Source: Octopus bimaculoides (lineage: Eukaryota). Taken from it: DNA of 33,006 nucleotides. Below are positions 47 through 33,006 of this stretch, in pieces. A program made the position numbers and the translations under genes. The notes under the pieces were generated by a model. That model did not search any database, was not told the origin of the DNA, and saw nothing but the letters and a program-made list of their open reading frames with translations. The stretch is taken from contig NC_069008.1 of assembly GCF_001194135.2 (NCBI RefSeq), positions 301,291 through 334,296 of the forward strand, given 5' to 3'. Numbering within the stretch: position 1 is the first letter of the stretch; each line of letters opens with the position of its first letter.

Positions 47-94
47 TGAAAAAAAACAATATGTACTAACATTTACTTGTGGTTTATTTTTTAG

Positions 95-1141
95 GCAAAG
101 GCTGTTCGTTTGTATACTTCTCTCTGAACGTGGCTCTCTTTACATACTTTCCAAACGTTGGTCGCCAATTGGTCTCCTTGGTCAGTGTTGGTGAAGGCGT
201 TTGTTTTATATTTGCTCTTCCTTTGATCTCATACTTCATTGAATCTTACGGCTGGCGGAGTAGTTTGCTCTTACTGTGTGGCATCGAAATGCACTGTATT
301 CCGTTTGGAATTATCTACAGCATGAAAGTAGACGTCACTCATGGTAATTGCAAAATGTCCAATCATTCTACAAGAGCAGCCATACGAACGGCCTCGTTTT
401 TTGAAAGCAAGAAAAGTCCACTCGCATCAAAGGAGAACCATGCAAATCACCCACAAAATAACGAGAGGAAAGAAGATCAATGCAATCCGTATTCAACTGC
501 TACAACAAATAAAGCTTGTGATGACACTAATAGCAGTGACAATGATTCCACAAACGATAAACCAAAACATTTAAACTCACCACGGTTGAATGACTCACGT
601 ATACCAAATGACAATGACAGTTCGATAGAAGTGGAGCAACCCGAGTCCAAGGAAAAGCATGGTATTAATTTTAAAAGCTTGAGAAATTTAGCCACAAATA
701 AAATGTACATGTTAGCTTTAATATCGGCGACCACCTTTCTTAGTACGTCACTGGTCATGTTAACGATTCTTCCTGACTTTTGCATGCAGCACGGCTTGTC
801 ACTCTCCCAAGGAGCTTGGAATAGTGCAATATCTTCAGTAGGGGATATCATCGCACGTTTTTTGGGTTCCTGGCTTCTTCATTCGAAACTGTTACCGAGC
901 ATAGTAACTTTTTCCTCAGCGATCATCATATGTGGCATTGCAATGTCCGTCTACATCGCCGTCAACACATTAACTTACATCACCCTGACTTCGTTCTTTT
1001 TCATGTTATTCAATGGACTTGCTTACTCTCAGTACGGTGTAATCTTCTTGGATCTTGTCGATTTAGAGGACTACGCTCTGGGGATGGGCCTGAACGAAAC
1101 TTCGGGTGGCATTGGTCTCTTATTGTGTGGTTATCTCGTCA
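95..1141 (+). CDS. Internal coding exon of an SLC16/monocarboxylate transporter (MCT)-like MFS protein (about TM4-TM11 plus large central loop); 5' exons lie outside the window
   Basis: Perfect TACTAAC branch point (64-70), ttttttag acceptor (exon starts 95, phase 1) and gtaagt donor at 1142; 1047 nt keeps frame. MCT-like motifs YGWRSSLLLLCG, long hydrophilic loop, TM8 GDIIARFLG. Confidence 0.85.
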
Positions 1142-1920
1142 GTAAGTATCTCTAAACATTTTTGGTATCGCCTCAAAAGTGATTGGGCATGTGTGTAGGC
1201 ATGCTCATATACGTGTGCGAGCATGATATATATGTGTGTATGCATGCATGAGTGTGTGTGTATGAGTCTGTAACGGCGAAAGATTATTTGTAGCGGTGAG
1301 ATTTGCTGGTAAGATGTAAAAGATGAACAATGCATGAGGTTTTAAGAAAATATTTATTTACCGTTACGTTGAATAAACCTTTGCCTCGACGGGCGTGTGT
1401 GGAAGGGAAGCCTTACGGCAGGGACATAACAGATGTCAGGCAGAAAGTAGTCGAACCAAGAAAGAAAGGTCAGACCTGGCCGAATCACGGTAATGTGGAA
1501 GAAGATGAGAGAGGTAGAGGCATAGAAGAATTAGAGAGGAACGAGGAAAAAAGAAAGGGGACAGAGTGAAGTGATATATATATATATATATATATATATG
1601 CGCAGGTGTGGCTGTGTATTTAAGACTTGGTTTTGTAAACGAGACGCTCACATTTGTTTTCAGATTTTTGTTTTAAATAAGAATTTGCTGTTACAGCATT
1701 CAATGCTTTTAATGTAATTATCCAAAGTCATGCATTTGGTCTCTTCGTGTTCTTCCTCTTATCTGTTTATTTGTCCTTATTTTTGATTATCTAATTTACC
1801 TAATTCATTTTGCTTTATATCAAAATGCAGTTTCTGACCTGTAAGCTGAGACTGTAACTTTTCTACTGATTATATGCATGCTTACAAGCATACGTACATT
1901 CAAACTTCTATGATTGTGCG

Positions 1921-2374: not shown

Positions 2375-2999
2375 TTTACCTCTGCCTTAGCGAAGGTAGA
2401 GGTATTGTTTCAGTCGTGTTTGTTTGTTTGACCGTGGACAAAATATCTCAGAAACCACTGATTGGATTCGGATGAAACTTTCAGGGATGTTTGGCCTCGT
2501 GACTAGCACGAACTGATTAGATTTGGGGATCAATCCGGTATCGGACATGGATTCTGGATTATTTTTTCAGTTTTTTTGTTTTTTTTCCTTACTTAATTTT
2601 TGAGAGCAGTCGGGCTCATTTTTAATATTCTCATTTGTAAGGCGGTGAGCTGGCGGAAACGTTAGCACGCCGGGCGAAACGCTTAGCGGTATTTCGTCTA
2701 CCGCTACGTTCTGAGTTCAAATTCCGCCGAGGTCGACTTTGCCTTTCATCCTTTCGNNNNNNNNNNNNNNNNNNNNNNNNNNNNNNNNNNNNNNNNNNNN
2801 NNNNNNNNNNNNNNNNNNNNNNNNNNNNNNNNNNNNNNNNNNNNNNNNNNNNNNNNNNNNNNNNNNNNNNNNNNNNNNNNNNNNNNNNNNNNNNNNNNNN
2901 NNNNNNNNNNNNNNNNNNTAAAAATCATCTCCGGCTAATCTTTGAGAGGACGTTGGTGCTGCCTTGGCGGAGGTTTGAACTCTCTGAGTGCTCTTGTTT
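2375..2999 (+). mobile_element. Non-autonomous Helentron-type element (HINE/DINE-1-like) in the MCT 3' UTR, with a nested SINE
   Basis: 5' tttacctctgcc, hairpin cctctgcctt-agcg-aaggtagagg (2379-2402), (gttt)n, ggatgaaacttt...gatt block; 3' sub-terminal inverted repeat ccttggcggaggt (2962-2974) followed by ctctctgagtgctcttgttt. Confidence 0.65.
2641..2756 (+). mobile_element. tRNA-derived SINE family A (octopus OR/OK-type), running into an N gap
   Basis: ggcggtgagctggcggaaacgttagc head, B-box-like gagttcaaattcc; same sequence recurs at 5451, 6858 and 27640-28232. Confidence 0.8.
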
Positions 3000-3069
3000 A
3001 ATTTTAATTTTCTGATTGAAGACTACGATGAATAAAAATGATTTATAAATCGATCGTTTCGTGTTTATC

Positions 3070-3209
3070 TTTTCTTCTTTTTTCTTTTACTTGCGTCAGT
3101 CATTTGACTACGGCCATGCTGGGGCACCGCCTCGAAGGGTTTTAGTCGAACAAAGCAATCCCAGAACTTATCTTTTTTTTTTTAGCCTTATACTTATTCC
3201 ATCGGTCTC
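3070..3209 (-). mobile_element. 3' part of a SINE family B copy
   Basis: Reverse complement gagaccgatggaataagta...gcatggccgtagtcaaatgactgacgcaagtaaaaga matches the 3' end of the copy at 28973-29365. Confidence 0.75.
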
Positions 3210-3219
3210 ATAAGTTAGT

Positions 3220-3301
3220 CGACGAGCATGAGATTCGAACTCACGTTGGGAGACACCGATGGATTAGGAGTCCATCGCGTCAACCCCTCAGTCACCTCGA
3301 T
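3220..3301 (-). tRNA. tRNA-Ser(GCT)-derived pseudogene with anticodon changed to CCT
   Basis: 82 nt, co-linear with canonical eukaryotic tRNA-Ser(GCT): perfect anticodon stem ATGGA/TCCAT, loop CT-CCT-AA, long variable arm, intact B box GAGTTCGAATC. Three mismatches in the acceptor stem and a broken D stem. Confidence 0.75.
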
Positions 3302-3876
3302 TGATACAAAAATGACTAATTCCACTCATGAATTTCTTTCTTCCTTCCTTCTTCTCCTTCTTTCTTTCTTAAATTAGCTTTTAGCGACAGAAGCAGCTTT
3401 TGTAATGGATATTAACTATCACATCCGACCTAACTTGGATCTGTTGTTTACAACGCCTTACGCTGCTGTAAACGTCCCGAAAACAAATTTCGTGGAGACA
3501 ACAAATGCTAAAAAGCATCAAAATTCTGTTATCACTTGATTCCACCGCATCGTGAATCATCAACGGCAACCATTCTAGCCGAATGCCAGAAAGAAAACCG
3601 GTCAAACTGATATGGAATTACATTGGCCAAACAGCCAATAGTATCGCGGGAAGTTGCCGAGCTGTGTATGGATTAGCAATTAGTGACAGAAGCAGCTTCT
3701 CTGGAATTGTTAAAAATGGTTGTTATTATTGTTGTAGACTGGCCAGCAGTTTTAAGGATAAAAGCTTCGTGCAATGGCCATACTCGATATTGAGTGAGTA
3801 GCCATAATGAATGTATGTCTGCATGCATGACATACATATTGTAGTTAACGTGTTACTCTTTATTCATAATGTCAAC

Positions 3877-4004
3877 GACTTTGCCTTTCGACCTTTCGAG
3901 GTCGATTAAATAAGTACCAGTTACGCACTGGGCTCGATGTAATCGACTTTATCCTTTTCTCTGTCCTTGTATGTCCCCTCTGTGAGTAATAAAGAAAAAA
4001 AAAA
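3877..4004 (+). mobile_element. 5'-truncated SINE family A
   Basis: gactttgcctttc...aagtaccagttacgcactggg...aataaagaaaa matches the 3' half of 5451-5659. Confidence 0.75.
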
Positions 4005-5450
4005 TATTCAATAAATGCAAGGCAGTTGGTTTCGTTTTCAAGGGAATGTACTCTTGGACTTCTCCTTTGACTTACCTCCCTTAGATCGTTTCACACGGAT
4101 AACATTTCTTTTTCTTGATTTTTCGAACTTTTTGCATTTAGCATCACATTCGGTCTTTTACGTTTCGAGCCTACGTTCTTCAGCAGAAAAGAATAAGAAG
4201 AAATAAATACAGAGAGAATGAAAACAGAAAAAAACGTGTTTTGTTCAGTGATAAAGATACAGATATACATTCATGTTTGCTTTCTTTGCCTTTGTAATTT
4301 AGAATAAATTTTGATCAGCCATCGCCTTGGTAGCAAGGTTGTGAATGAATGCATCTTGTTTTGTTCATTATCGTTTAAATATTAAGAAGATCTTGCAGAT
4401 TCTTATAGTCTCAGATATCGTGATCATTTGCAGCATATAAATTAAGGATTTGCGTTCTCCCCACAAAGATCCCAAGTTCAGCCATACTTTGCTCCAGACG
4501 GGTCGGCACGTATCCTGTTGCTCTAATAATAATAAGAGATGTCACTGAAAGTGTATCCTGAGTGCCGGATATGAAAACTTCGTATCAGTGGTCCGTAGAT
4601 GTGCTCTGTATGTATGTATGTAAGCGTGTATGTATGCGTGTACGAGCCACAGAGGGAGGGTTCGGGATCTTTTTTAAAACGGGGGCCACATTTTTCATTA
4701 ACGAAACACTTTGAAACTTGGAACACTGGTAGAATGTGTCATATAAAACATCTTTTTCTCTTAGTCTTCTTTAAAAAAAAAAGAAATCCCTAAGTTATTC
4801 CATGTTAAAGTTGTCGTATTTCTGTAATTTCAACCAATCACTGACGTCCATTCAGCCGATATACATTAAGTGCCGACTACATAAACAAACAATTCTATCG
4901 GTGATAGGGTTAGGGTTCGGGTAGAACAGCAAATTTAAAAAGAAAAAAGCAAATANNNNNNNNNNNNNNNNNNNNNNNNNNNNNNNNNNNNNNNNNNNNN
5001 NNNNNNNNNNNNNNNNNNNNNNNNNNNNNNNNNNNNNNNNNNNNNNNNNNNNNNNNNNNNNNNNNNNNNNNNNNNNNNNNNNNNNNNNNNNNNNNNNNNN
5101 NNNNNNNNNNNNNNNNNNNNNNNNNNNNNNNNNNNNNNNNNNNNNNNNNNNNNNNNNNNNNNNNNNNNNNNNNNNNNNNNNNNNNNNNNNNNNNNNNNNN
5201 NNNNNNNNNNNNNNNNNNNNNNNNNNNNNNNNNNNNNNNNNNNNNNNNNNNNNNNNNNNNNNNNNNNNNNNNNNNNNNNNNNNNNNNNNNNNNNNNNNNN
5301 NNNNNNNNNNNNNNNNNNNNNNNNNNNNNNNNNNNNNNNNNNNNNNNNNNNNNNNNNNNNNNNNNNNNACATTAATTTGTCGAGTTCGAAGCATGTCAAA
5401 ATGTTAAACGAAGTTGTTTCTTGCATTTCACACCACGAGATATAAATATG

Positions 5451-5659
5451 AGGACAGCGAGCTGGCAGAATCGTTAGCGCGCCAGACGAAATGCTCAGCG
5501 GTATTTCGTCTGCCGTTACGTTCTGAGTTCAAATTCCGCCAAGGTCGATATTGCCTTTTCTCCTTTCGGGGTCGATTAAATAAGTACCAGTTACGCACTG
5601 GGCTCGATGTAATCGACTTAATCTGTTTGTCTGTCCCCTCTGTGGGCAATAAAGAAATA
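5451..5659 (+). mobile_element. Full-length SINE family A
   Basis: Head gagctggcagaatcgttagc, B box gagttcaaattcc, core aagtaccagttacgcactggg, tail aataaagaaata. Confidence 0.85.
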
Positions 5660-5761
5660 TACATACATCTAAATCAAAATTTATTCATTATGGACCCCCC
5701 CCCCAACCTACTATTTTGGTTGCTTGAACCTACAAATATCATATGGACCGTCAGAGGCCAT

Positions 5762-6589
5762 ATTTATATATTTACTTCGTCCTTATATTTATTGCGCTGA
5801 TATTTCTGACCATATCGCGCGAGCATTTTCTTGGCGAGCAACTTAAACTGGTCGTCTGCATACGTGCATATATATGTATGTATACATGTTGTATATATAT
5901 ACATCTGTATTTATATGCTTTTCTATGTATATTCCACTGATGATGCAAAGCATTTCTTATGCAAAACCAGAAATCTGGAATCTGGAATTATCCAGTAATT
6001 TTTGCTGGTTTATTTGTCTCTTCGTCTTCTCTCCTGGTGCTTTATGAACATTTATTGTGGATTTTAGAGTCAAGCTTTGACTGCTATTTTCAGCGTGGCG
6101 GTGTCTCTTAGATACCCTAAATTATAATTTTAAATAATTATTACCTTTGATGGTTTTTTATTCCCATGCTGGCCACTTGATAAAATCGATATTTTAAATA
6201 TCGATCTTATCCTCATTTATATAAATTTATATATTTACTTCGTCATTATATTTACTGCGGTGACATTTCTGACCATATCGCGCGAGGATTTACATGGCGG
6301 GTAATTTAAACTGGTCGTCTGCATACATATGTAAGTATATCTTATGTTGTATGTATATATATATATATATATATATCTGTATATATGTGCTTTTCTGTGT
6401 ATATTCCACTGATGATGCAGAGCATTTCTTAAGCAAAACCAGAAATCCAGGATATGGAATTATTCAGTAATTTTTGCTGGTTTATTTGTCTCTTCATCTT
6501 CTCTCCTGGTGCTTTGTGAACATTTATTGTGGTTTTAGAGTCAAGCTTTGACTGCTATTTTCAGCGTGGCGGTGTCTCTTAGATACCCT
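5762..6589 (+). repeat. Direct duplication of about 360 bp (5762-6118 and 6225-6589) with a 106 bp spacer
   Basis: The two copies align end to end; the final ttttagagtcaagc...tcttagataccct segment (about 57 bp) is identical. Confidence 0.9.
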
Positions 6590-6789
6590 GCATGCTGCAA
6601 TAAGTGTGTGAATCTGAGAGGGGAAACAGTTGAATAAAATCATAATTAACTGATCCTCCTCTATTTTCTTTTACCAAAAGCCATCGACTTTTCACCACCC
6701 GTGTGTACGTATGCACGCATGTATGAATGTGTGTATGTATGCATAGATGTATGTCATTGTTCAGGTTTATTTCAAGATCTCTTGCCAAT

Positions 6790-7790
6790 AGATAAAAAGC
6801 CGGTTTCTAACCTAGATCCATTGGATTCCATCTAGATTCATTGGAATTTCAACGGGGAAGGGGGTCTGGCAGAAACAGTAGCACGTCGGGCGAAATGCTT
6901 AGCGATATTTCGTCTGAATTTATGTTCTGAGTTCAAACTCCGCCGAGGTCTACTTTGCCTTTAATCCTTTCGGGATCGATAAATTAAGTACCAGTTACGC
7001 ACTGGGTTCGATCTAATCGACTGGACCCCTCCCCAAAAGTTTCGGGCCTTGTGCTTACAACAGAAAAGAATATCAACAACGGGCTATTTTTGTATGTATG
7101 TGTTATGTATTTGTGCATATTTTTATGCTTAGCTTTATGTATGTATTCTCATGCATATAGCTACATATCTAGACAAGCTCATGTATATTTAAATGATAAA
7201 CTTCTGGAATTTTTACAGATTTTTACAGTTCCAGTGATGGATTGGATCTGTAATCTTCGAATAAGCTTTCTCCTTTCTGGTTTTGAGAAGCCTAATTTCT
7301 CAAGATTGCTATTTAGGCTGTGTGTTACATATCCCAGGGCCCCAATAATTACAGGTATAAACCTGAACTTGTAATCTGGATAGAGTAACTGCAGATTTCT
7401 CAATAGTTCAGCATAGATCTTCTCTTTTTCACTGATCTTCAGCTTTATGTTAACATCCGCTGGGCNNNNNNNNNNTTATGCTTACATTCTATTATGGTCT
7501 TCCCTGGGACATTCCACCAGTATTCCTTTTTATTATGAGTGGCAATGGGGTTCTTATTTCTTTGTTATCGGGATTATATTATATAGTGTCCTAGCTACAA
7601 CATCATGTCTCGTCGGTAGATAATACCATGATGACATTTTCAGACAACTGCTTACGATGTGGGTGATATCTTCAGTGTGAACGCCACAGAATCTGCATCG
7701 GTTGTCTCATTTTGCTGCTTTACCTGCATCTCTGTCCCCTTTGTGCATCAGGTGTGTGGTTGATATTTCCTGTTCCTGGATTGCAAACGC
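6790..7790 (-). mobile_element. 3' remnant of an RLE-type non-LTR retrotransposon (R4/Dong- or HERO/NeSL-like), with a SINE A in its putative 3' UTR
   Basis: Minus strand encodes FAIQEQEI, the knuckle CRFCGVHTEDITHIVSSC (C-x2-C-x8-H-x4-C, 7644-7697), RHDVVA, and PADVNIKLKISEKEKIYAELL...FIPVIIGALG (restriction-like endonuclease C-terminus). Confidence 0.8.
6858..7076 (+). mobile_element. SINE family A (ccctccccaaaa tail variant)
   Basis: Family A head and core; candidate 7 bp TSD caacggg at 6850-6856 and 7077-7083. Confidence 0.8.
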
Positions 7791-9039
7791 AATCCATGTA
7801 CCTATGTATGTATGTATGTATACGTGTATGAATGAATGCGTGTATATATATATGTATGTATGAATGCGTCTATGCATGTATGTGTGTATGCGTATTCACA
7901 TAGTTACTTACGTGCAAGCCAACAGAGGCCACCTGCTAGAAATAACAGCTCAAACGACATTTTAATCTTATATATAAATGAATGAGCCACAGCAGGCGAT
8001 TTCTCTCGCCGTCTCATAACCATTATTTCTCTTCCATTCAACACTTTCTTTCCTCCGCCTACCACCTTGAAATCAGCCAGCATGCCACTTCGTCTATTAC
8101 TCTTTACTCCTCCTTTCACCCTACACTCCGTTCATCTTTCCATTCATTTTTCTCTCTCTCTTTCTCTCTCTCTCTCTTTCACTCACACCTTTTCATGTAA
8201 TTCCTCATCCACTCCTCTCTCCCTTTTAATTCTTTGATTTTACTTTCTCTCTCTTACTCACTCACTCACTCACTGTCTCTCTCTCTCTCTTTTCTGCGAC
8301 TACTCCTCCTACCCCTACCTCCCGTCTGTCGGTAAACTATTTCCCTCCACCTACTCTGACTACCACTCCTTACCAAGCAGGCTGTCGTCTGCTGCCCATT
8401 CACCGTCTCCTTGCTCCTCTCTCCATTGGACAACCTCCACCTACTCCCCAAAAGCCAACACGACCCGTGTGGGTGGTCGCATGACGTGCTAGAAATAACA
8501 ACCTGTGCTCCCTCAAATCACACCTTAGCTTCTTACAAATAGACGCACATGTCAGATAACATTGCCAAATAAACACAGTGGCCATGCATGGAAAGCCATT
8601 GATCAAAATTCCATCTGAAGTTCGTCAGAGTTCACCTGAACTAAACCACGTCAACGATTACTCATTCATTCTCTCTCCCTCCTTCTCTTTCTATCTTTTC
8701 CCTCTCTCNNNNNNNNNNNNNNNNNNNNNNNNNNNNNNNNNNNNNNNNNNNNNNNNNNNNNNNNNNNNNNNNNNNNNNNNNNNNNNNNNNNNNNNNNNNN
8801 NNNNNNNNNNNNNNNNNNNNNNNNNNNNNNNNNNNNNNNNNNNNNNNNNNNNNNNNNNNNNNNNNNNNNNNNNNNNNNNNNNNNNNNNNNNNNNNNNNNN
8901 NNNNNNNNNNNNNNNNNNNNNNNNNNNNNNNNNNNNNNNNNNNNNNNNNNNNNNNNNNNNNNNNNNNNNNNNNNNNNNNNNNNNNNNNNNNNNNNNNNNN
9001 NNNNNNNNNNNNNNNNNNNNNNNNNNNNNNNNNNNNNNN

Positions 9040-9262
9040 CTCACTCTTACTTCCTGTTTCTGTTGTGCCTGTAATTCAAAGGGGTCAGCCTTGTCACACT
9101 GCGTGTCACGCTGAATATCCCCGAGAACTACGTTAAGGGTACACGTGTCTGTGGAGTGCTCAGCCACTTGCACTTTAATTTCACGAGCAGGCTGTTCCGT
9201 TGATCGGATCAACTGGAACCCTCGTCGTCGTAAGCGACGGAGTGCCCAACAATCTAACAACA
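9040..9262 (+). mobile_element. 3' half of a SINE family C copy (5' part in N gap)
   Basis: Near-identical to 12570-12790 and to the reverse complement of 19467-19690; ends in an aac-type tail. Confidence 0.85.
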
Positions 9263-9510
9263 ACCTGTTCAAAGTAATGTCAAGAAGAGCACCGTTTCAT
9301 CTTCTGAAAGAGTAACAGACGGGAAATAATGCCCGTCGAACACTGTTTCAAACAGACTGAGGATCTGTTAAACAACACTCACTACTACAGCACAAGCCTA
9401 ACATCAAACCACTAGTCCTACTACAACCGTTCAAACCCGAACGATTCTATATCGACTCTAGACACAACTAACACTCGCAGACAGTAGATACGTATTGGTA
9501 TATATATCAT

Positions 9511-9739
9511 TCTTCTATTCTTTTGCTCAGTTATTTGACTGCGGCCATGCTGGAGCATCGCCTTGAAGGGTTTTAGTCGAATAAATGGAACCCCAGGACA
9601 TATTTTTTTAAGCCTAGTACTTATTCTAGCGGTATCTTTTGCTGAACCGCTAATTTACGGGGACGTAAACGCACCAACACCAGTTGTCAAATGGTAATGG
9701 GAGACACACACACATACATACATACATATAGGTAGATAG

Positions 9740-9796
<57 letters not shown>

Positions 9797-9960
9797 CACA
9801 TACGATGGGCTTCTTTCAGTTTCTGTCTACCCAAATCCACTCACACGGCTTTGGTCGGGGCCTGAGGTTTTAGTAGAAGACACTTGCTCAAGGTGCCACG
9901 AAGTGAGACTGAACCCGGAACCATTTCGTTGGAAAGCAACCTTCTTAACCACACAGTTAC
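9511..9960 (-). mobile_element. SINE family B with internal (AG)n expansion
   Basis: Reverse complement aligns along its length to 10474-10809 and 28973-29365. Confidence 0.8.
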
Positions 9961-10053
9961 CGGGCATAATCTGCGATGCTGCGCTTTCGTCGCTGGATCT
10001 ACGTAAGGAATTTTTCGTTACATTTTGAGTATATTGCAAATGGTTGATACGGC

Positions 10054-10437
10054 AGACGGGTTGTAACTAGCACAACAATCGTTTCGGCTGCCTTCTGCAC
10101 TGTTCCCTAGTGGGTGGGGAATGATGTGATGACATCAGCTGCATCATGCAGTGCAAACAAACTTCATCAGGTGACGTAATATACTTCAAAAGTGATAAGA
10201 TTTACATTTTACTTCAAGTTAGATGCTGGTAGTATTACGTTGTGTTGCTAGTTGTTCACACATAGTACCAGCAGCATGTGGCTAGAAGCGAACTCTTATA
10301 ACTTTTGAGGCATATCACATCACCTGATCAGGCTCCCTGCCCTGTGCGATGCATCTGATATCATTACATCGGTCCCCACTCATTAAGAAACAGGGCAGAA
10401 GGCAGCGAAAACGAATGTTGAGCTAAATAAAGCGTCT
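10054..10437. mobile_element. Fold-back element / probable MITE with imperfect inverted arms of about 145 bp
   Basis: 10054-10200 is the imperfect reverse complement of 10294-10437 (gctgccttctgcactgtt vs aacagggcagaaggcagc; atcaggtgacgtaatatacttcaaaagtgataaga vs tcttataacttttgaggcatatcacatcacctgat). Confidence 0.75.
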
Positions 10438-10473
10438 AGTGACATTCCTGCTTCCGTATCAATCATTTAATAT

Positions 10474-10809
10474 ATAGGAGTGGCTGTGTGGTAAGTAGCT
10501 TGCTTCGCAACCACATGGTTCCGGGTTCAGTCCCACTGCGCGGACCTTGGGCAACAGTCTTCAACTATAGCCTCGGGCCAACCAAAGCCTTGTGAGTGGG
10601 TTTGGTAGACGGAAACTGAAAGAAGACCGTCGTGTGTGTGTGTTCGCGTCTGTGTTTGTCTCCCCAATATCACTTGACAACCGATGCTGGTGTGTTTATG
10701 TCCCCGTAACTTAGCGGTTCGGCAAAAAGAGACCGATAGAATAAGCATTAGGGTTACAAAGAGTAAGTCCTGGGGTCGATTTGCTCGACCAAAGGCGGTG
10801 CTCCAGTAT
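10474..10809 (+). mobile_element. SINE family B (tRNA-derived), 3' end in N gap
   Basis: A-box-like tggctgtgtggtaag and B-box-like gggttcagtccc; multiple copies in the window. Confidence 0.85.
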
Positions 10810-27348: not shown

Positions 27349-27438
27349 AATTCAGTCCATCATATTGTGCTAACATTGACTACTACAGACAAAGTTATGA
27401 CAGAGTGGAGCAAGCCAGTACTTCCATGGCCATCATTC
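27349..27438 (+). CDS. Coding exon 2 of the TARP-like gene (end of extracellular loop 1)
   Basis: tatttcag acceptor, gtaagt donor at 27439, 90 nt, phase 1-1; encodes (E)FSPSYCANIDYYRQSYDRVEQASTSMAII, matching the stargazin C-x2-ID segment. Confidence 0.85.
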
Positions 27439-28685: not shown

Positions 28686-28820
28686 GAGCCATCCGTTTGT
28701 CTGCACCATATCCAGTTTTTGCTCTCATCATGATCGTGGTGGCTGCCATAACCAGTGTGATTGGTAACATTAAGACCGACGTGAAAACTTTATTCGGTGC
28801 CATTATTTATGTTTTCTCAG
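28686..28820 (+). CDS. Coding exon 3 of the TARP-like gene (TM2 to start of TM3)
   Basis: (CT)n-ccag acceptor, gtgagc donor at 28821, 135 nt, phase 1-1; (R)AIRLSAPYPVFALIMIVVAAITSVIGNIKTDVKTLFGAIIYVFS resembles stargazin RAVRASSIFPILSVILL...IILSAGIFFVS. Confidence 0.9.
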
Positions 28821-31205: not shown

Positions 31206-31680
31206 CTCTGATAAAGTTGAGCATCAGCCAGAATATGAGGTCCTCCTTGAAGGCCTCATCAACTTTTTCAAGTTCCACTTGAAGAGGAAGATGAGAGTAG
31301 AGAGGGAAGTGCTGTCTCATAGCAAATTTATTGAAAGGTGGGTAAATATCAGTAAAATGGCCAGTATGAACGGACCAATTCTGAGGATACACCTGTAAAA
31401 AAAAAAAGGGTAATATAAAAGGAGAAAGGGCTCTCTACCCCTTTCTTATTTTCTGACCAGGCTCCCGTGGCTTTTATGGGTTTTTCCACGTGTAACCTTT
31501 CGAAGCGCCCCCCCCCCCCCATTGGGAGTTTTATTTGTTATATCTTTCTCTGTTTTCCTCACTGTTTACACGAACGTTTTTTCTACCTTTTCAGACAAAA
31601 CCCTTTGTACCCTTCGTCCTGTCTTTGTCCTTACATATTCTTAATTTATATTAGCTCTTGTGGCCAATAAAACCAGAATC

Positions 31681-31681
31681 A

Positions 31682-31725
<44 letters not shown>

Positions 31726-32010
31726 GAAGGTGAATGGCATAGTGGTTAGGGTGTTGCAATTATGATCACTAGATTATGATTTCAAGCAGTGCTGTTTTCT
31801 GCAAGTGCTCCACCCTTATTGCAGCCCCTATTTGTTGCACGTACTTCTCAAGATTTTTACTCACTGTTCCCATGGCTCCGACAATTATTGGTGGTAGTGG
31901 TACTAATTATTATTATTATTATTATCATTACTATTACTATTACTATTAGGTGGTAGTGGTAACAATTATTATTATTATTATTATTATTGTTATTATTATT
32001 ATTATTATTA
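31681..32010. repeat. (ATT)n tracts flanking a degenerate SINE D-like head (about 31726-31830)
   Basis: ATT repeats visible; atggcatagtggttagggtgttg resembles an A-box head. Confidence 0.7.
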
Positions 32011-32022
32011 TCTCTTCTTCAG

Positions 32023-33006
32023 GTCTGGCTTTGTCAGTTGGCATCATTCTCTACATATCAGCTGTCAACGATGAGGTGGGACATCGAGCCAAGATCATTG
32101 GTGTCCAAGGCCCAAAGTTTGCCTACTTCTATGGCTGGTCGTTCTTCTTTGCCGGAGTGTCCTTCATCACTGCCGAAATGGCAGCTGTGTTTGGCATCTC
32201 ACTCTACCTGCTGCGCAACTCACACGTCGACGACATTCTGCGCATCATCCCTGGCCTCGAGGACAGGCTAGACAAATTGAATAAGCTCAACGGTTACCGC
32301 AACGACTATGAGGACGACGATGTCTATGAGGATGGTGAAAGCCACTATGCTCGCACCCAGGGCAGGCAACTGCAGAAGCAACAATCACAAGAACAACAGC
32401 AACAGCAACAACAACAACAACAGCAACAACAACAACAACAACACAGCATTTATCAAACTTTACAACAGATACAGCAAGAGAAACAACAGCAACAACTTAG
32501 TCACTACCAAACATTGCAACAAATACAGCGCGAGAAACAACAGCAACAACAGCAACAGCAGCATTGCCACTATCAGACACTACAACAGATTCAACGGGAA
32601 AAGCCACAGCAAAGTCATTACCAAACCTTGCAAGAAATAAAACAAGACAAACAACAGCAAGAATGCCGTGAAATGGATGCTGAGAGTAACATTTATGCCA
32701 CGTTGCGCCATGCTGACGAGATGAGGAAAGATCCACGCGTCATCATTAGCGACTTTGATTTCGGTGGCCCCATCTATGGTGATAACGTGGACAGTGCCGC
32801 CCCTGTTGCATCGGATCTGGCCACCACCATCAGCCCTGGCCTCGACACCTACGCTGATCCATATGCACTCGATGGTTCAAAGTATACCATTTACGGACGA
32901 GTATCTCCAGCTAGTGCGGGCGGGGAGGGGGCGGGCGTGGCAGCTGCGTCATCGACGTCGTATGCCACCTATGACGTCATCAACAATGCTCCCGACGACA
33001 TCACCG
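32023..33006 (+). CDS. Coding exon 4 of the TARP-like gene (TM3, TM4, long cytoplasmic tail); open to the window end
   Basis: tctcttcttcag acceptor, phase 1; GLALSVGIILYISAVNDE...YFYGWSFFFAGVSFITAEMAAVFGISLYL resembles stargazin GLSNIIGIIVYISA...[23 protein letters not shown]. Manual translation finds no stop through 33006. The ORF track omits this frame. Confidence 0.92.

What the first reader, a model, noticed from the sequence alone, without database searches (positions are those of the whole stretch)
32445..32705. Tandem ITIM-like tyrosine-motif array in the TARP cytoplasmic tail, conserved at protein level
Seen: four repeats SIYQTLQQIQQEK, SHYQTLQQIQREK, CHYQTLQQIQREK, SHYQTLQEIKQDK (Tyr codons 32451, 32505, 32571, 32619; spacing 18, 22, 16 aa, set by Gln-rich linkers), then NIYATL (32688-32705). 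YQTL is coded tat caa act tta / tac caa aca ttg / tat cag aca cta / tac caa acc ttg: every difference is synonymous, which argues for purifying selection. Known: SxYxxL fits the ITIM consensus (SHP-1/2, SHIP docking), YxxL is also the AP-2/AP-3 mu sorting signal, and vertebrate TARPs have no such array. Inference: a possibly undescribed module coupling a glutamate-receptor auxiliary subunit to multivalent phosphotyrosine/SH2 signalling or endocytic sorting in cephalopod neurons. This is the strongest novelty candidate in the window.
Basis: partly seen in the sequence, partly recalled or inferred. Interest (0 to 1): 0.8.

Follow-up and report, generated by a model that had tools for sequence, protein, structure and literature searches.

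The report
Tyrosine-motif repeats in octopus TARP tail
An unannotated octopus copy of a glutamate-receptor helper protein (TARP) carries a long extra cytoplasmic tail with four selectively maintained YQTL tyrosine motifs, which probably dock trafficking or signalling adaptors, but nobody has yet shown that the tail is expressed.

Summary
Window 32445-32651 encodes four copies of [SC][IH]YQTLQ[QE]I[QK][QR][ED]K, followed by NIYATL at 32688-32705. They lie in a frame that stays open for 327 codons to the window end.

Differences between the units fall mostly at third codon positions. Units 2 and 3 differ at 12 nucleotides but only 1 amino acid, so the peptide is under purifying selection.

The exon is the last visible exon of a four-exon TARP gene. 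It passes the Pfam claudin thresholds, and its predicted fold best matches TARP gamma-5 and gamma-7.

The window is Octopus bimaculoides CM046628.1:301,291-334,296. The gene is an old, constrained TARP-B1 paralog (omega about 0.05) lying tail-to-tail about 36 kb from annotated TARPB1c, with short tracts identical or nearly identical to it.

All 35 aligned mollusc and brachiopod TARP-B proteins lack this tail; most are short and end in ...TIVL or ...NPTIIL.

No protein in 5.8 billion clusters or 1.84 billion representatives contains this tail. It is therefore unannotated, and I found neither transcript nor ortholog evidence.

The ITIM reading is only a consensus match (3 of 5 motifs). YQTL fits a YxxØ adaptor-sorting signal at least as well. 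The conserved core is longer than either motif and is predicted to be helical.

Verdict: a real, probably functional new tail variant of a known family; its mechanism is unproven.

The parts
16286..16478 (+). Exon 1 of the TARP-B1 paralog (MNNQ...CTIN, TM1 and the start of extracellular loop 1). It is 99.6% identical to exon 1 of TARPB1c and sits on a 779-bp contig between two N gaps.
   Evidence: tblastn, splice sites and phases, identity and gaps
27349..27438 (+). Exon 2 (EFSPSYCANIDYYRQSYDRVEQASTSMAII). It is 65% identical to TARPB1c at protein level and has a 4-residue deletion.
28686..28820 (+). Exon 3 (TM2 and the TM2-TM3 linker), 89% identical to TARPB1c.
32023..33006 (+). Exon 4: TM3, TM4 and a cytoplasmic tail of at least 257 residues. 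The reading frame is still open at the window end.
31845..32236 (+). Tract essentially identical to O. bimaculoides TARPB1c, covering the end of intron 3 and the first 214 bp of exon 4. It carries O. bimaculoides-specific variants and ends abruptly at 32237. Read as a gene-conversion tract.
32235..32273 (+). Juxtamembrane motif ILRIIPGLEDRLD, the TARP-B hallmark RIIPGLE[DE]. It is diverged from TARPB1c (5 synonymous and 4 replacement changes) and anchors the tail to a TARP exon in frame.
32295..32348 (+). Acidic tyrosine cluster YRNDYEDDDVYEDGESHY.
32394..32441 (+). Run of 16 glutamines, encoded by an imperfect (CAA/CAG)n repeat.
32445..32651 (+). Four-unit array [SC][IH]YQTLQ[QE]I[QK][QR][ED]K with Gln-rich linkers. 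Units are at 32445-32483, 32499-32537, 32565-32603 and 32613-32651.
32688..32705 (+). Fifth, diverged motif NIYATL.
32886..32903 (+). TIYGRV: a YxxØ motif that also fits the ITSM pattern TxYxx[VI].
32964..32981 (+). ATYDVI: a further YxxØ motif in the distal tail, which is predicted to be disordered.

Best explanation
The array is genuine coding sequence in the terminal exon of an unannotated, old and selectively constrained TARP-B1 paralog of Octopus bimaculoides. Exon 1 lies at about CM046628.1:317.6 kb, and exon 4 runs past 334.3 kb.

In this paralog the tail common to most TARP-B proteins (about 40 residues, ending ...TIVL or ...NPTIIL) is replaced, at least over the first 257 residues, by a tail rich in Gln, Tyr and acidic residues. 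Within it a unit of about 18 residues was duplicated in tandem four times. Its 13-residue core has since been held constant while synonymous sites randomised.

Most likely mechanism (inferred, not shown): the tail is a multivalent tyrosine-based docking module on a glutamate-receptor auxiliary subunit. When unphosphorylated, the YQTL and YATL motifs act as YxxØ signals for clathrin-adaptor mu subunits of the AP-2/AP-3 type. YQTL is a hybrid of the textbook signals YQRL (TGN38) and YQTI (LAMP-1). This would set the endocytosis and lysosomal sorting of the TARP-receptor complex. Tyrosine phosphorylation could switch the same sites to SH2 docking, as in CTLA-4.

Shown: the sequence, the frame, the selection, the TARP identity and the genomic position. 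Inferred: expression, cytoplasmic exposure and every binding partner.
For: - The frame is open for 327 codons, and 0 of 20,000 shuffles stay open.
- Differences between repeat units are concentrated at synonymous sites: 15 of 22 minimum substitutions are at third positions, and units 2 and 3 give P < 5e-5.
- Exons 2-4 lie on one gap-free contig with canonical splice sites and compatible phases.
- Against TARPB1c, pS is 0.72 (saturated) and pN is 0.10, giving omega about 0.04-0.05. The O. bimaculoides versus O. sinensis dS for TARPB1c is only 0.12, so this is an old paralog that has been kept functional.
- Pfam Claudin_2 scores 59.8 bits and PMP22_Claudin 54.2 bits, both above their cut-offs.
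- The AlphaFold core has pLDDT above 90, and Foldseek's best matches are TARP gamma-5 and gamma-7, with E = 3e-14 and a target-normalised TM-score of 0.87.
- Seven YxxØ motifs occur in 257 tail residues, and Tyr makes up 6.2% of the tail.
- Vertebrate stargazin already controls AMPA-receptor endocytosis and lysosomal delivery through AP-2 and AP-3 binding (PMC6502786, section 13). A TARP tail that engages adaptors therefore has precedent.
Against: - There is no transcript evidence.
- No annotated or predicted protein in 5.8 billion clusters or 1.84 billion representatives contains the tail, although the locus lies in an NCBI-annotated assembly.
- I could reach no ortholog, so conservation across species is untested.
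- Conservation covers 13 residues (Q+4, I+6 and K+10 are invariant), more than a mu2 or SH2 site needs.
- AlphaFold predicts the array as part of a long helix (residues 249-331 and 340-374), whereas mu2 and SH2 domains bind extended peptides. Q-rich helices of this kind are often over-confident predictions.
- The motifs lie about 75-160 residues from TM4.
- The C-terminus is beyond the window.
Confidence: 0.4

Rival explanations
1. Phosphotyrosine signalling scaffold. Src-family kinases phosphorylate the SxYxxL motifs, which then recruit tandem-SH2 proteins such as SHP2/Csw or a Syk/Shark-type kinase. This would couple the receptor complex to tyrosine-phosphatase or kinase signalling.
For: - Three motifs fit the strict ITIM consensus.
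- TIYGRV fits the ITSM pattern.
- Units 3-4 fit a relaxed ITAM (YxxL-x12-YxxL).
- Tyr-to-Tyr spacing of 16-22 residues is, from general knowledge, in the range bridged by tandem SH2 domains.
- The tail has 16 tyrosines, several in acidic contexts typical of kinase substrates.
Against: - The consensus is very loose and fails for 2 of the 5 motifs (C and N at position -2).
- Canonical ITAM spacing (x6-8) is not met.
- From my own knowledge, Q at +1 is not the preference reported for the SHP2 or SHIP SH2 domains.
- ITIMs are defined by function, and nothing functional could be tested.
- The array is predicted to be helical.
Confidence: 0.2
2. Structural Q-rich helical or coiled-coil module. The conserved Y-x-x-L-x-x-I stripe with charged ends is the hydrophobic face of a repeated amphipathic helix. 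It would mediate self-association, scaffold binding or condensate formation at the synapse. On this view the YxxL motifs are incidental.
For: - AlphaFold predicts helices at residues 249-331 (block-mean pLDDT about 69-95) and 340-374, covering the polyQ run and all five motifs.
- Invariant positions extend to Q+4, I+6 and K+10, beyond any short linear motif.
- Y, L and I fall within a 120-degree arc of a helix (inference).
- Gln makes up 55 of 257 tail residues.
Against: - High-confidence Q-rich single helices are a known AlphaFold habit, and the tail had no alignment depth.
- Spacing between units (18, 22 and 16 residues) is not in heptad register.
- Tyr is invariant in every unit, although Phe or Leu would serve a purely hydrophobic role.
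Confidence: 0.2
3. Not part of a functional protein. Either the paralog is silent or recently pseudogenised and the tail is a relic, or the join between the TARP exon and the array is an assembly chimera formed at the (CAA)n tract.
For: - No protein from NCBI, UniRef, EukProt or Logan covers exons 2-3 or the tail of this gene, although the assembly carries NCBI gene models.
- The window has 10 N gaps, and exon 1 sits on a 779-bp contig between gaps.
- Tracts identical or nearly identical to TARPB1c could be paralog collapse rather than gene conversion.
- A 65-bp CAA/CAG repeat (TRF call; its core is the 48-bp run of 16 Gln codons at 32394-32441) separates the TARP-like part from the array.
Against: - The frame is intact for 327 codons, and exons 2-3 are intact with omega about 0.05.
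- Exons 2-4 lie on one gap-free 12.5-kb contig.
- TARP homology continues 38 bp past the identity tract in the same frame.
- The frame and the Q-rich composition are continuous across the CAA tract.
- No other protein in the databases owns the YQTL array.
- Logan holds no O. bimaculoides contigs even for the annotated TARPB1b and TARPB1c, so its silence is uninformative.
Confidence: 0.15

Closest known systems
Protostome TARP-B proteins and vertebrate type II TARPs (CACNG5, CACNG7); specifically O. bimaculoides TARPB1c (XP_014776155.1 / UVH70849.1) and TARPB1b (UVH70856.1)
   Same: It has the four-TM claudin fold, the GLW...C...C motif in loop 1 and the RIIPGLE[DE] juxtamembrane motif. It is 88% identical overall to TARPB1c. 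It sits on the same chromosome, about 36 kb away, tail-to-tail. The octopus-specific expansion of TARP-B has already been reported (PMC9282427).
   Different: All 35 other mollusc and brachiopod TARP-B proteins in the alignment lack this tail. Most end about 35-45 residues after TM4 in ...[NT][PT]T[IV][IV][LM]. This gene instead continues for at least 257 residues with polyQ, an acidic Tyr cluster and the YQTL array, and the conserved terminal motif is absent from the visible part.
YxxØ tyrosine-based sorting signals (TGN38 YQRL, LAMP-1 GYQTI), and stargazin's AP-2/AP-3 binding
   Same: All five motifs plus two more fit YxxØ. YQTL combines residues of two classic mu-adaptin ligands (general knowledge). 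A vertebrate TARP tail already engages AP-2 and AP-3 to drive AMPA-receptor endocytosis (PMC6502786).
   Different: As far as I know, stargazin binds the adaptors through a region controlled by serine phosphorylation, not through YxxØ. Here the signal is repeated four to seven times and lies far from the membrane in a predicted helix. No binding was tested.
ITIM, ITSM and ITAM motifs of immune receptors (for example PECAM-1, SIRPα, PZR, Draper)
   Same: They share SxYxxL-type sequences in the cytoplasmic tail of a membrane protein, in multiple copies 16-22 residues apart. One ITSM-like motif and one relaxed ITAM-like pair are present.
   Different: The carrier is a claudin-fold channel auxiliary subunit, not an Ig or lectin receptor. 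Two of the five motifs fail the ITIM consensus. Canonical ITAM spacing is not met. Phosphorylation and SH2 recruitment are unknown.
Long, lineage-specific low-complexity tails of other TARPs (vertebrate gamma-7 and gamma-8; fish gamma-7a with a poly-Q/H tract)
   Same: Divergent tail extensions on a conserved TM core are a recurrent theme. Fish gamma-7a (P0033) also has a long Q/H-rich stretch.
   Different: There is no sequence homology between the tails, and none of the others carries a repeated tyrosine motif.

Membership tests
TARP (claudin-superfamily AMPA-receptor auxiliary subunit; TARP-B / type II-like) | Four-TM PMP22/claudin domain above Pfam gathering thresholds | tested here: met
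   Spliced model: Claudin_2 scores 59.8 bits (cut-off 29.1) and PMP22_Claudin 54.2 bits (cut-off 26.7).
TARP (claudin-superfamily AMPA-receptor auxiliary subunit; TARP-B / type II-like) | Three-dimensional fold closest to solved TARPs rather than to other claudins | tested here: met
   The AlphaFold core has pLDDT above 90. The top 50 Foldseek PDB hits are all TARP gamma-2, -3, -5, -7 or -8; the best are gamma-5 and gamma-7 (E = 3e-14, target-normalised TM-score 0.87, 33-36% identity). phmmer against PDB sequences agrees.
TARP (claudin-superfamily AMPA-receptor auxiliary subunit; TARP-B / type II-like) | Loop-1 GLW...C...C motif and TARP-B juxtamembrane RIIPGLE[DE] motif | tested here: met
   G56, L57, W58, C61, C71, P216, G217 and L218 are invariant or nearly invariant in the 37-sequence alignment.
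TARP (claudin-superfamily AMPA-receptor auxiliary subunit; TARP-B / type II-like) | Conserved TARP-B C-terminus ...T[IV][IV][LM], a putative PDZ ligand | tested here: inconclusive
   It is absent from the 257 visible tail residues, but the frame runs off the window end, so the true C-terminus is unseen.
TARP (claudin-superfamily AMPA-receptor auxiliary subunit; TARP-B / type II-like) | Binds and modulates AMPA-type glutamate receptors | not testable with these tools
   This is inferred by homology only. Within the TARP-B clade only C. elegans STG-2 has functional data (PMC9282427).
ITIM | Sequence consensus [S/I/V/L]xYxx[I/V/L] | tested here: inconclusive
   SIYQTL and both SHYQTL motifs fit. 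CHYQTL and NIYATL do not. The pattern is short and loose.
ITIM | Tyrosine phosphorylation and recruitment of SHP-1, SHP-2 or SHIP through SH2 domains | not testable with these tools
   No phosphoproteomic or binding data are available.
ITAM | YxxL/I-x(6-8)-YxxL/I | tested here: not met
   Tyr-to-Tyr spacing is 18, 22 and 16 residues. Only units 3-4 fit a relaxed x6-12 definition, at x12.
YxxØ adaptor-sorting signal | Y-x-x-bulky hydrophobic residue in a cytosolic segment at least 7 residues from the membrane | tested here: met
   Seven matches (four YQTL, plus YATL, YGRV and YDVI) lie 75-250 residues after TM4.
YxxØ adaptor-sorting signal | Accessible, extended peptide that binds a mu-adaptin | tested here: inconclusive
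   AlphaFold predicts a helix over the array, but there was no alignment depth for the tail. Binding is not testable here.

The most novel reading that the evidence does not exclude
An octopus-lineage TARP has acquired a multivalent, phosphotyrosine-switchable module: YxxØ adaptor signals when unphosphorylated and ITIM/ITAM-like SH2 docking sites when phosphorylated. This would give a glutamate-receptor auxiliary subunit a direct line to tyrosine kinase and phosphatase signalling as well as to endocytosis. No vertebrate or other invertebrate TARP is known to have such a coupling, and it arose within the octopus-specific TARP-B expansion.
Probability: 0.12. Interest if true: 0.75.

Novelty: new variant of a known kind. 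Interest (0 to 1): 0.45.

Why it matters
TARP cytoplasmic tails decide where and for how long AMPA-type receptors stay at synapses. In vertebrates this control runs through serine phosphorylation, lipid binding, PDZ ligands and AP-2/AP-3 binding.

TARP-B is the one synaptic scaffold family reported to have expanded in octopus relative to Aplysia (PMC9282427). If one of the octopus-specific copies swapped the conserved short tail for a selected array of tyrosine motifs, it would be a concrete, testable example of how cephalopods diversified receptor trafficking or signalling independently of vertebrates.

It would also flag a constrained gene that is missing from the protein sets derived from current octopus annotations.

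If the tail proves to be unexpressed, the finding reduces to a curiosity of paralog decay.

Tried and rejected
- **Tail homologs.** I searched exon 4 against 5.8 billion protein clusters. I ran the tail alone with full HMMER against 1.84 billion representatives; the only hit was one spurious Q-rich protein, P0066. A scan of JGI metagenome contigs found nothing.
- **Gene model for this paralog.** A search with the N-terminal 263 residues found none. The best hit is TARPB1c at 90% identity. The cluster members are only TARPB1b and TARPB1c from three Octopus species.
- **Tail in neighbouring loci.** tblastn of the tail against the TARPB1c loci of O. bimaculoides (L001, including 10 kb downstream) and O. 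sinensis (L002) gave no match.
- **Sequence beyond the window end.** The TARPB1c and MFS loci stop short, at record positions 360,004 and 313,652. The O. vulgaris TARPB1c and O. bimaculoides TARPB1b gene ranges exceed 100 kb, so no DNA was returned. P0036 is not on record.
- **Route through the antisense calpain gene.** I abandoned this because no calpain coding exon was recognisable in L001. The calpain gene later turned out not to overlap the window.
- **tblastx of the window against L001.** This showed only interspersed repeats.
- **Alternative short-tail isoform.** I first suspected an alternative splice to a short ...TIVL exon. I rejected this because in TARPB1c the short tail is contiguous with TM4 in a different locus.
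- **Pfam.** There is no domain in the tail; the weak GDPD hit is below threshold. Two intronic ORFs also have no Pfam hit.
- **Literature.** Searching 'YQTL' returned nothing relevant. 'TARPB1' was not found as such. The supplements of PMC9282427 are not held.

Full report
**1. The observation**

Reading window 31500-33006 and translating 32025-33005 on the + strand reproduces the four units and the fifth motif as described:
- SIYQTLQQIQQEK
- SHYQTLQQIQREK
- CHYQTLQQIQREK
- SHYQTLQEIKQDK
- NIYATL

At DNA level the array is a diverged tandem repeat. TRF reports period 54 with 81% matches. The direct-repeat family has 5 copies at 61-77% identity to the reference copy. Linker lengths are set by CAA/CAG runs.

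The frame has no stop in 327 codons and is still open at the window end. The other two frames have 4 and 17 stops. None of 20,000 shuffles of the tail stayed open.

**2. Selection on the repeat**

Across the four 13-codon cores, the minimum numbers of substitutions at codon positions 1, 2 and 3 are 5, 2 and 15.

Units 2 and 3 differ at 12 of 39 nucleotides but at only one amino acid. In 20,000 simulations that placed the same number of changes at random, none gave so few replacements. Four of the six pairs have P <= 7e-4; the other two give 0.008 and 0.12.

Synonymous sites between units are effectively saturated, so the duplications are not recent and the peptide has been held constant. The conserved positions go beyond YxxL: Y, Q+1, T+2, L+3, Q+4, I+6 and K+10 are invariant.

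**3. What gene this is**

- **Sequence match to solved TARPs.** The N-terminal 65-80 residues of the exon match TM3-TM4 of solved TARPs. The best matches are gamma-5 and gamma-7 at E = 1e-8.
- **Exon structure.** tblastn with the closest database protein finds three upstream exons. With canonical GT/AG sites and compatible phases, the model is exon 1 at 16286-16478, exon 2 at 27349-27438, exon 3 at 28686-28820 and exon 4 at 32023 to beyond 33006.
- **Pfam.** The spliced protein passes both claudin models (59.8 and 54.2 bits).
- **Fold.** An AlphaFold model built on a 37-sequence alignment has a TM core with pLDDT above 90. Its best PDB matches are all TARPs, led by gamma-5 and gamma-7 (E = 3e-14, target-normalised TM-score 0.87).
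- **Family motifs.** The loop-1 GLW...C...C motif and the TARP-B juxtamembrane motif RIIPGLE[DE] are present.

The TARP assignment, and the cytoplasmic position of everything after TM4, are therefore well supported. Receptor modulation itself is inferred by homology.

**4. Which TARP, and where**

The closest protein is O. bimaculoides XP_014776155.1, also deposited as 'TARPB1c'. A second cluster contains 'TARPB1b'.

These names come from Orvis et al. 2022 (PMC9282427). That paper defines protostome TARP-A and TARP-B. [quoted passage not shown]

The TARPB1c locus (L001) is a different locus from the window. There, exon 4 reads straight from TM4 into ...KVDGDNYQDNVGIQTTTIVL and a stop.

The MFS-transporter exon at window 79-1155 is 100% identical to O. 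bimaculoides LOC106873337. The window aligns at 100% to that locus. This places the window at GCA_001194135.2 CM046628.1:301,291-334,296 on the + strand.

TARPB1c lies on the same chromosome at 370,004-402,090 on the - strand. The two genes are therefore tail-to-tail, about 36 kb apart.

**5. Mosaic relationship to TARPB1c**

Two tracts are identical or nearly identical to TARPB1c:
- Window 16286-16568 is 99.6% identical; this tract ends in an N gap.
- Window 31845-32236 is essentially identical and includes variants that distinguish O. bimaculoides from O. sinensis.

Identity stops abruptly at 32237.

Elsewhere the genes are old paralogs. Over exons 2 and 3 and the juxtamembrane segment, pS is 0.72 (saturated) and pN is 0.10, giving omega of about 0.04-0.05. 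Between the two species' TARPB1c genes, dS is only 0.12.

The simplest reading is an ancient, constrained paralog that has undergone recent short gene-conversion events with its inverted neighbour. An assembly chimera is less likely for two reasons. Exons 2-4 sit on a single gap-free 12.5-kb contig. TARP homology also continues in frame for 38 bp past the identity tract (ILRIIPGLEDRLD against MVRIIPGLEDKVD).

**6. How unusual the tail is**

In the alignment of 35 mollusc and brachiopod TARP-B proteins plus one fish gamma-7a, none has this tail. Most TARP-B proteins end 35-45 residues after TM4 in a conserved ...[NT][PT]T[IV][IV][LM]. A few gastropod models have longer, unrelated tails.

This gene instead has the following elements:
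- an acidic Tyr cluster (32295-32348)
- a run of 16 glutamines (32394-32441)
- the four-unit array
- NIYATL
- a distal segment, predicted to be disordered, containing TIYGRV and ATYDVI

The tail has 16 Tyr and 55 Gln in 257 residues.

No protein in 5.8 billion clusters matched the tail. All hits covered only the TM part. A full HMMER scan of 1.84 billion representatives gave only one spurious Q-rich protein. No model covering this gene's exons 2-3 exists either.

The gene is therefore missing from every protein set I could search, although it lies in an assembly with NCBI gene models.

This absence does not count strongly against expression. Logan-derived proteins include no O. bimaculoides contigs even for the annotated TARPB1b and TARPB1c. 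It does mean that there is no positive evidence of expression.

**7. Mechanism**

The motifs satisfy several short consensus patterns:
- seven YxxØ motifs
- three strict ITIMs; CHYQTL and NIYATL fail at position -2
- one ITSM-like motif
- one relaxed ITAM-like pair (x12); canonical ITAM spacing is not met

From established knowledge, YQTL combines the classic mu-adaptin ligands YQRL (TGN38) and YQTI (LAMP-1). Vertebrate stargazin already drives AMPA-receptor endocytosis and lysosomal delivery through AP-2 and AP-3 (PMC6502786).

On that basis I rank a multivalent adaptor-sorting module first, possibly switchable by phosphorylation as in CTLA-4. A purely SH2-based ITIM-like scaffold and a structural helical role come next.

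The structural alternative deserves weight. AlphaFold places the whole array in long helices at residues 249-331 and 340-374. The selected core is also longer than any mu2 or SH2 footprint. Against this, the tail had no alignment depth, and Q-rich helices are a common over-prediction.

I found no strong internal 5' splice site that would remove the tail. That scan was crude.

**8. Verdict**

The ITIM and SH2 function is an untested pattern match with an at least equally good alternative.

The feature is a new tail variant of a known family, in a gene that current octopus annotations miss. What is lacking is transcript evidence, the true C-terminus and orthologs. None of these could be reached with the tools available.

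Noticed in passing
window 79-1155 (+): This is the terminal coding exon of an MFS_1 transporter, 100% identical to O. bimaculoides LOC106873337 (P0068). It fixes the window at GCA_001194135.2 CM046628.1:301,291-334,296. The O. sinensis ortholog P0067 is 91% identical.
   Followed up: yes
window 16286-16568 and 31845-32236; L001 10013-10294 and about 41607-41996: Two short tracts are identical or nearly identical to the inverted neighbour TARPB1c, set in otherwise saturated paralogous sequence. The boundaries are sharp: one lies at the ATG of exon 1 and one at 32237. They look like recent gene conversion between tail-to-tail paralogs.
   Followed up: partly
window 2757-20505 (ten N runs); exon 1 contig at 15790-16568: The first 20.5 kb of the window is broken by ten assembly gaps. 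Exon 1 sits on a 779-bp contig between two gaps, so its assignment to this gene is less secure than that of exons 2-4.
   Followed up: partly
window 31682-31725 and 31906-32011: Long (ATT)n microsatellites lie immediately upstream of the exon 4 acceptor. The same arrangement occurs in TARPB1c of O. bimaculoides and O. sinensis.
   Followed up: no
(no DNA returned): The gene models for O. bimaculoides TARPB1b and O. vulgaris TARPB1c span 308 kb and 118 kb. O. bimaculoides TARPB1c spans only 32 kb. Either the first introns are very long, or first exons are being joined across neighbouring paralogs.
   Followed up: no
window 9040-9252, 12474-12780, 19440-19771; L001 13336-13665: Copies of an interspersed repeat of about 300 bp, 92-95% identical, occur in both TARP loci in both orientations. 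Other SINE-like repeats are shared as well.
   Followed up: no
P0033 (fish CACNG7a) in alignment A2, columns 425-510: A vertebrate type II TARP also has a long poly-Q/H tract in its tail. It is not homologous to the octopus tail and appears to be a convergent low-complexity expansion.
   Followed up: no
L001 1-44654 (- strand of the locus): O. bimaculoides TARPB1c is nested antisense inside an intron of a 614-residue calpain gene. That gene starts about 2.5 kb beyond the TARPB1c stop codon and does not reach the window.
   Followed up: partly
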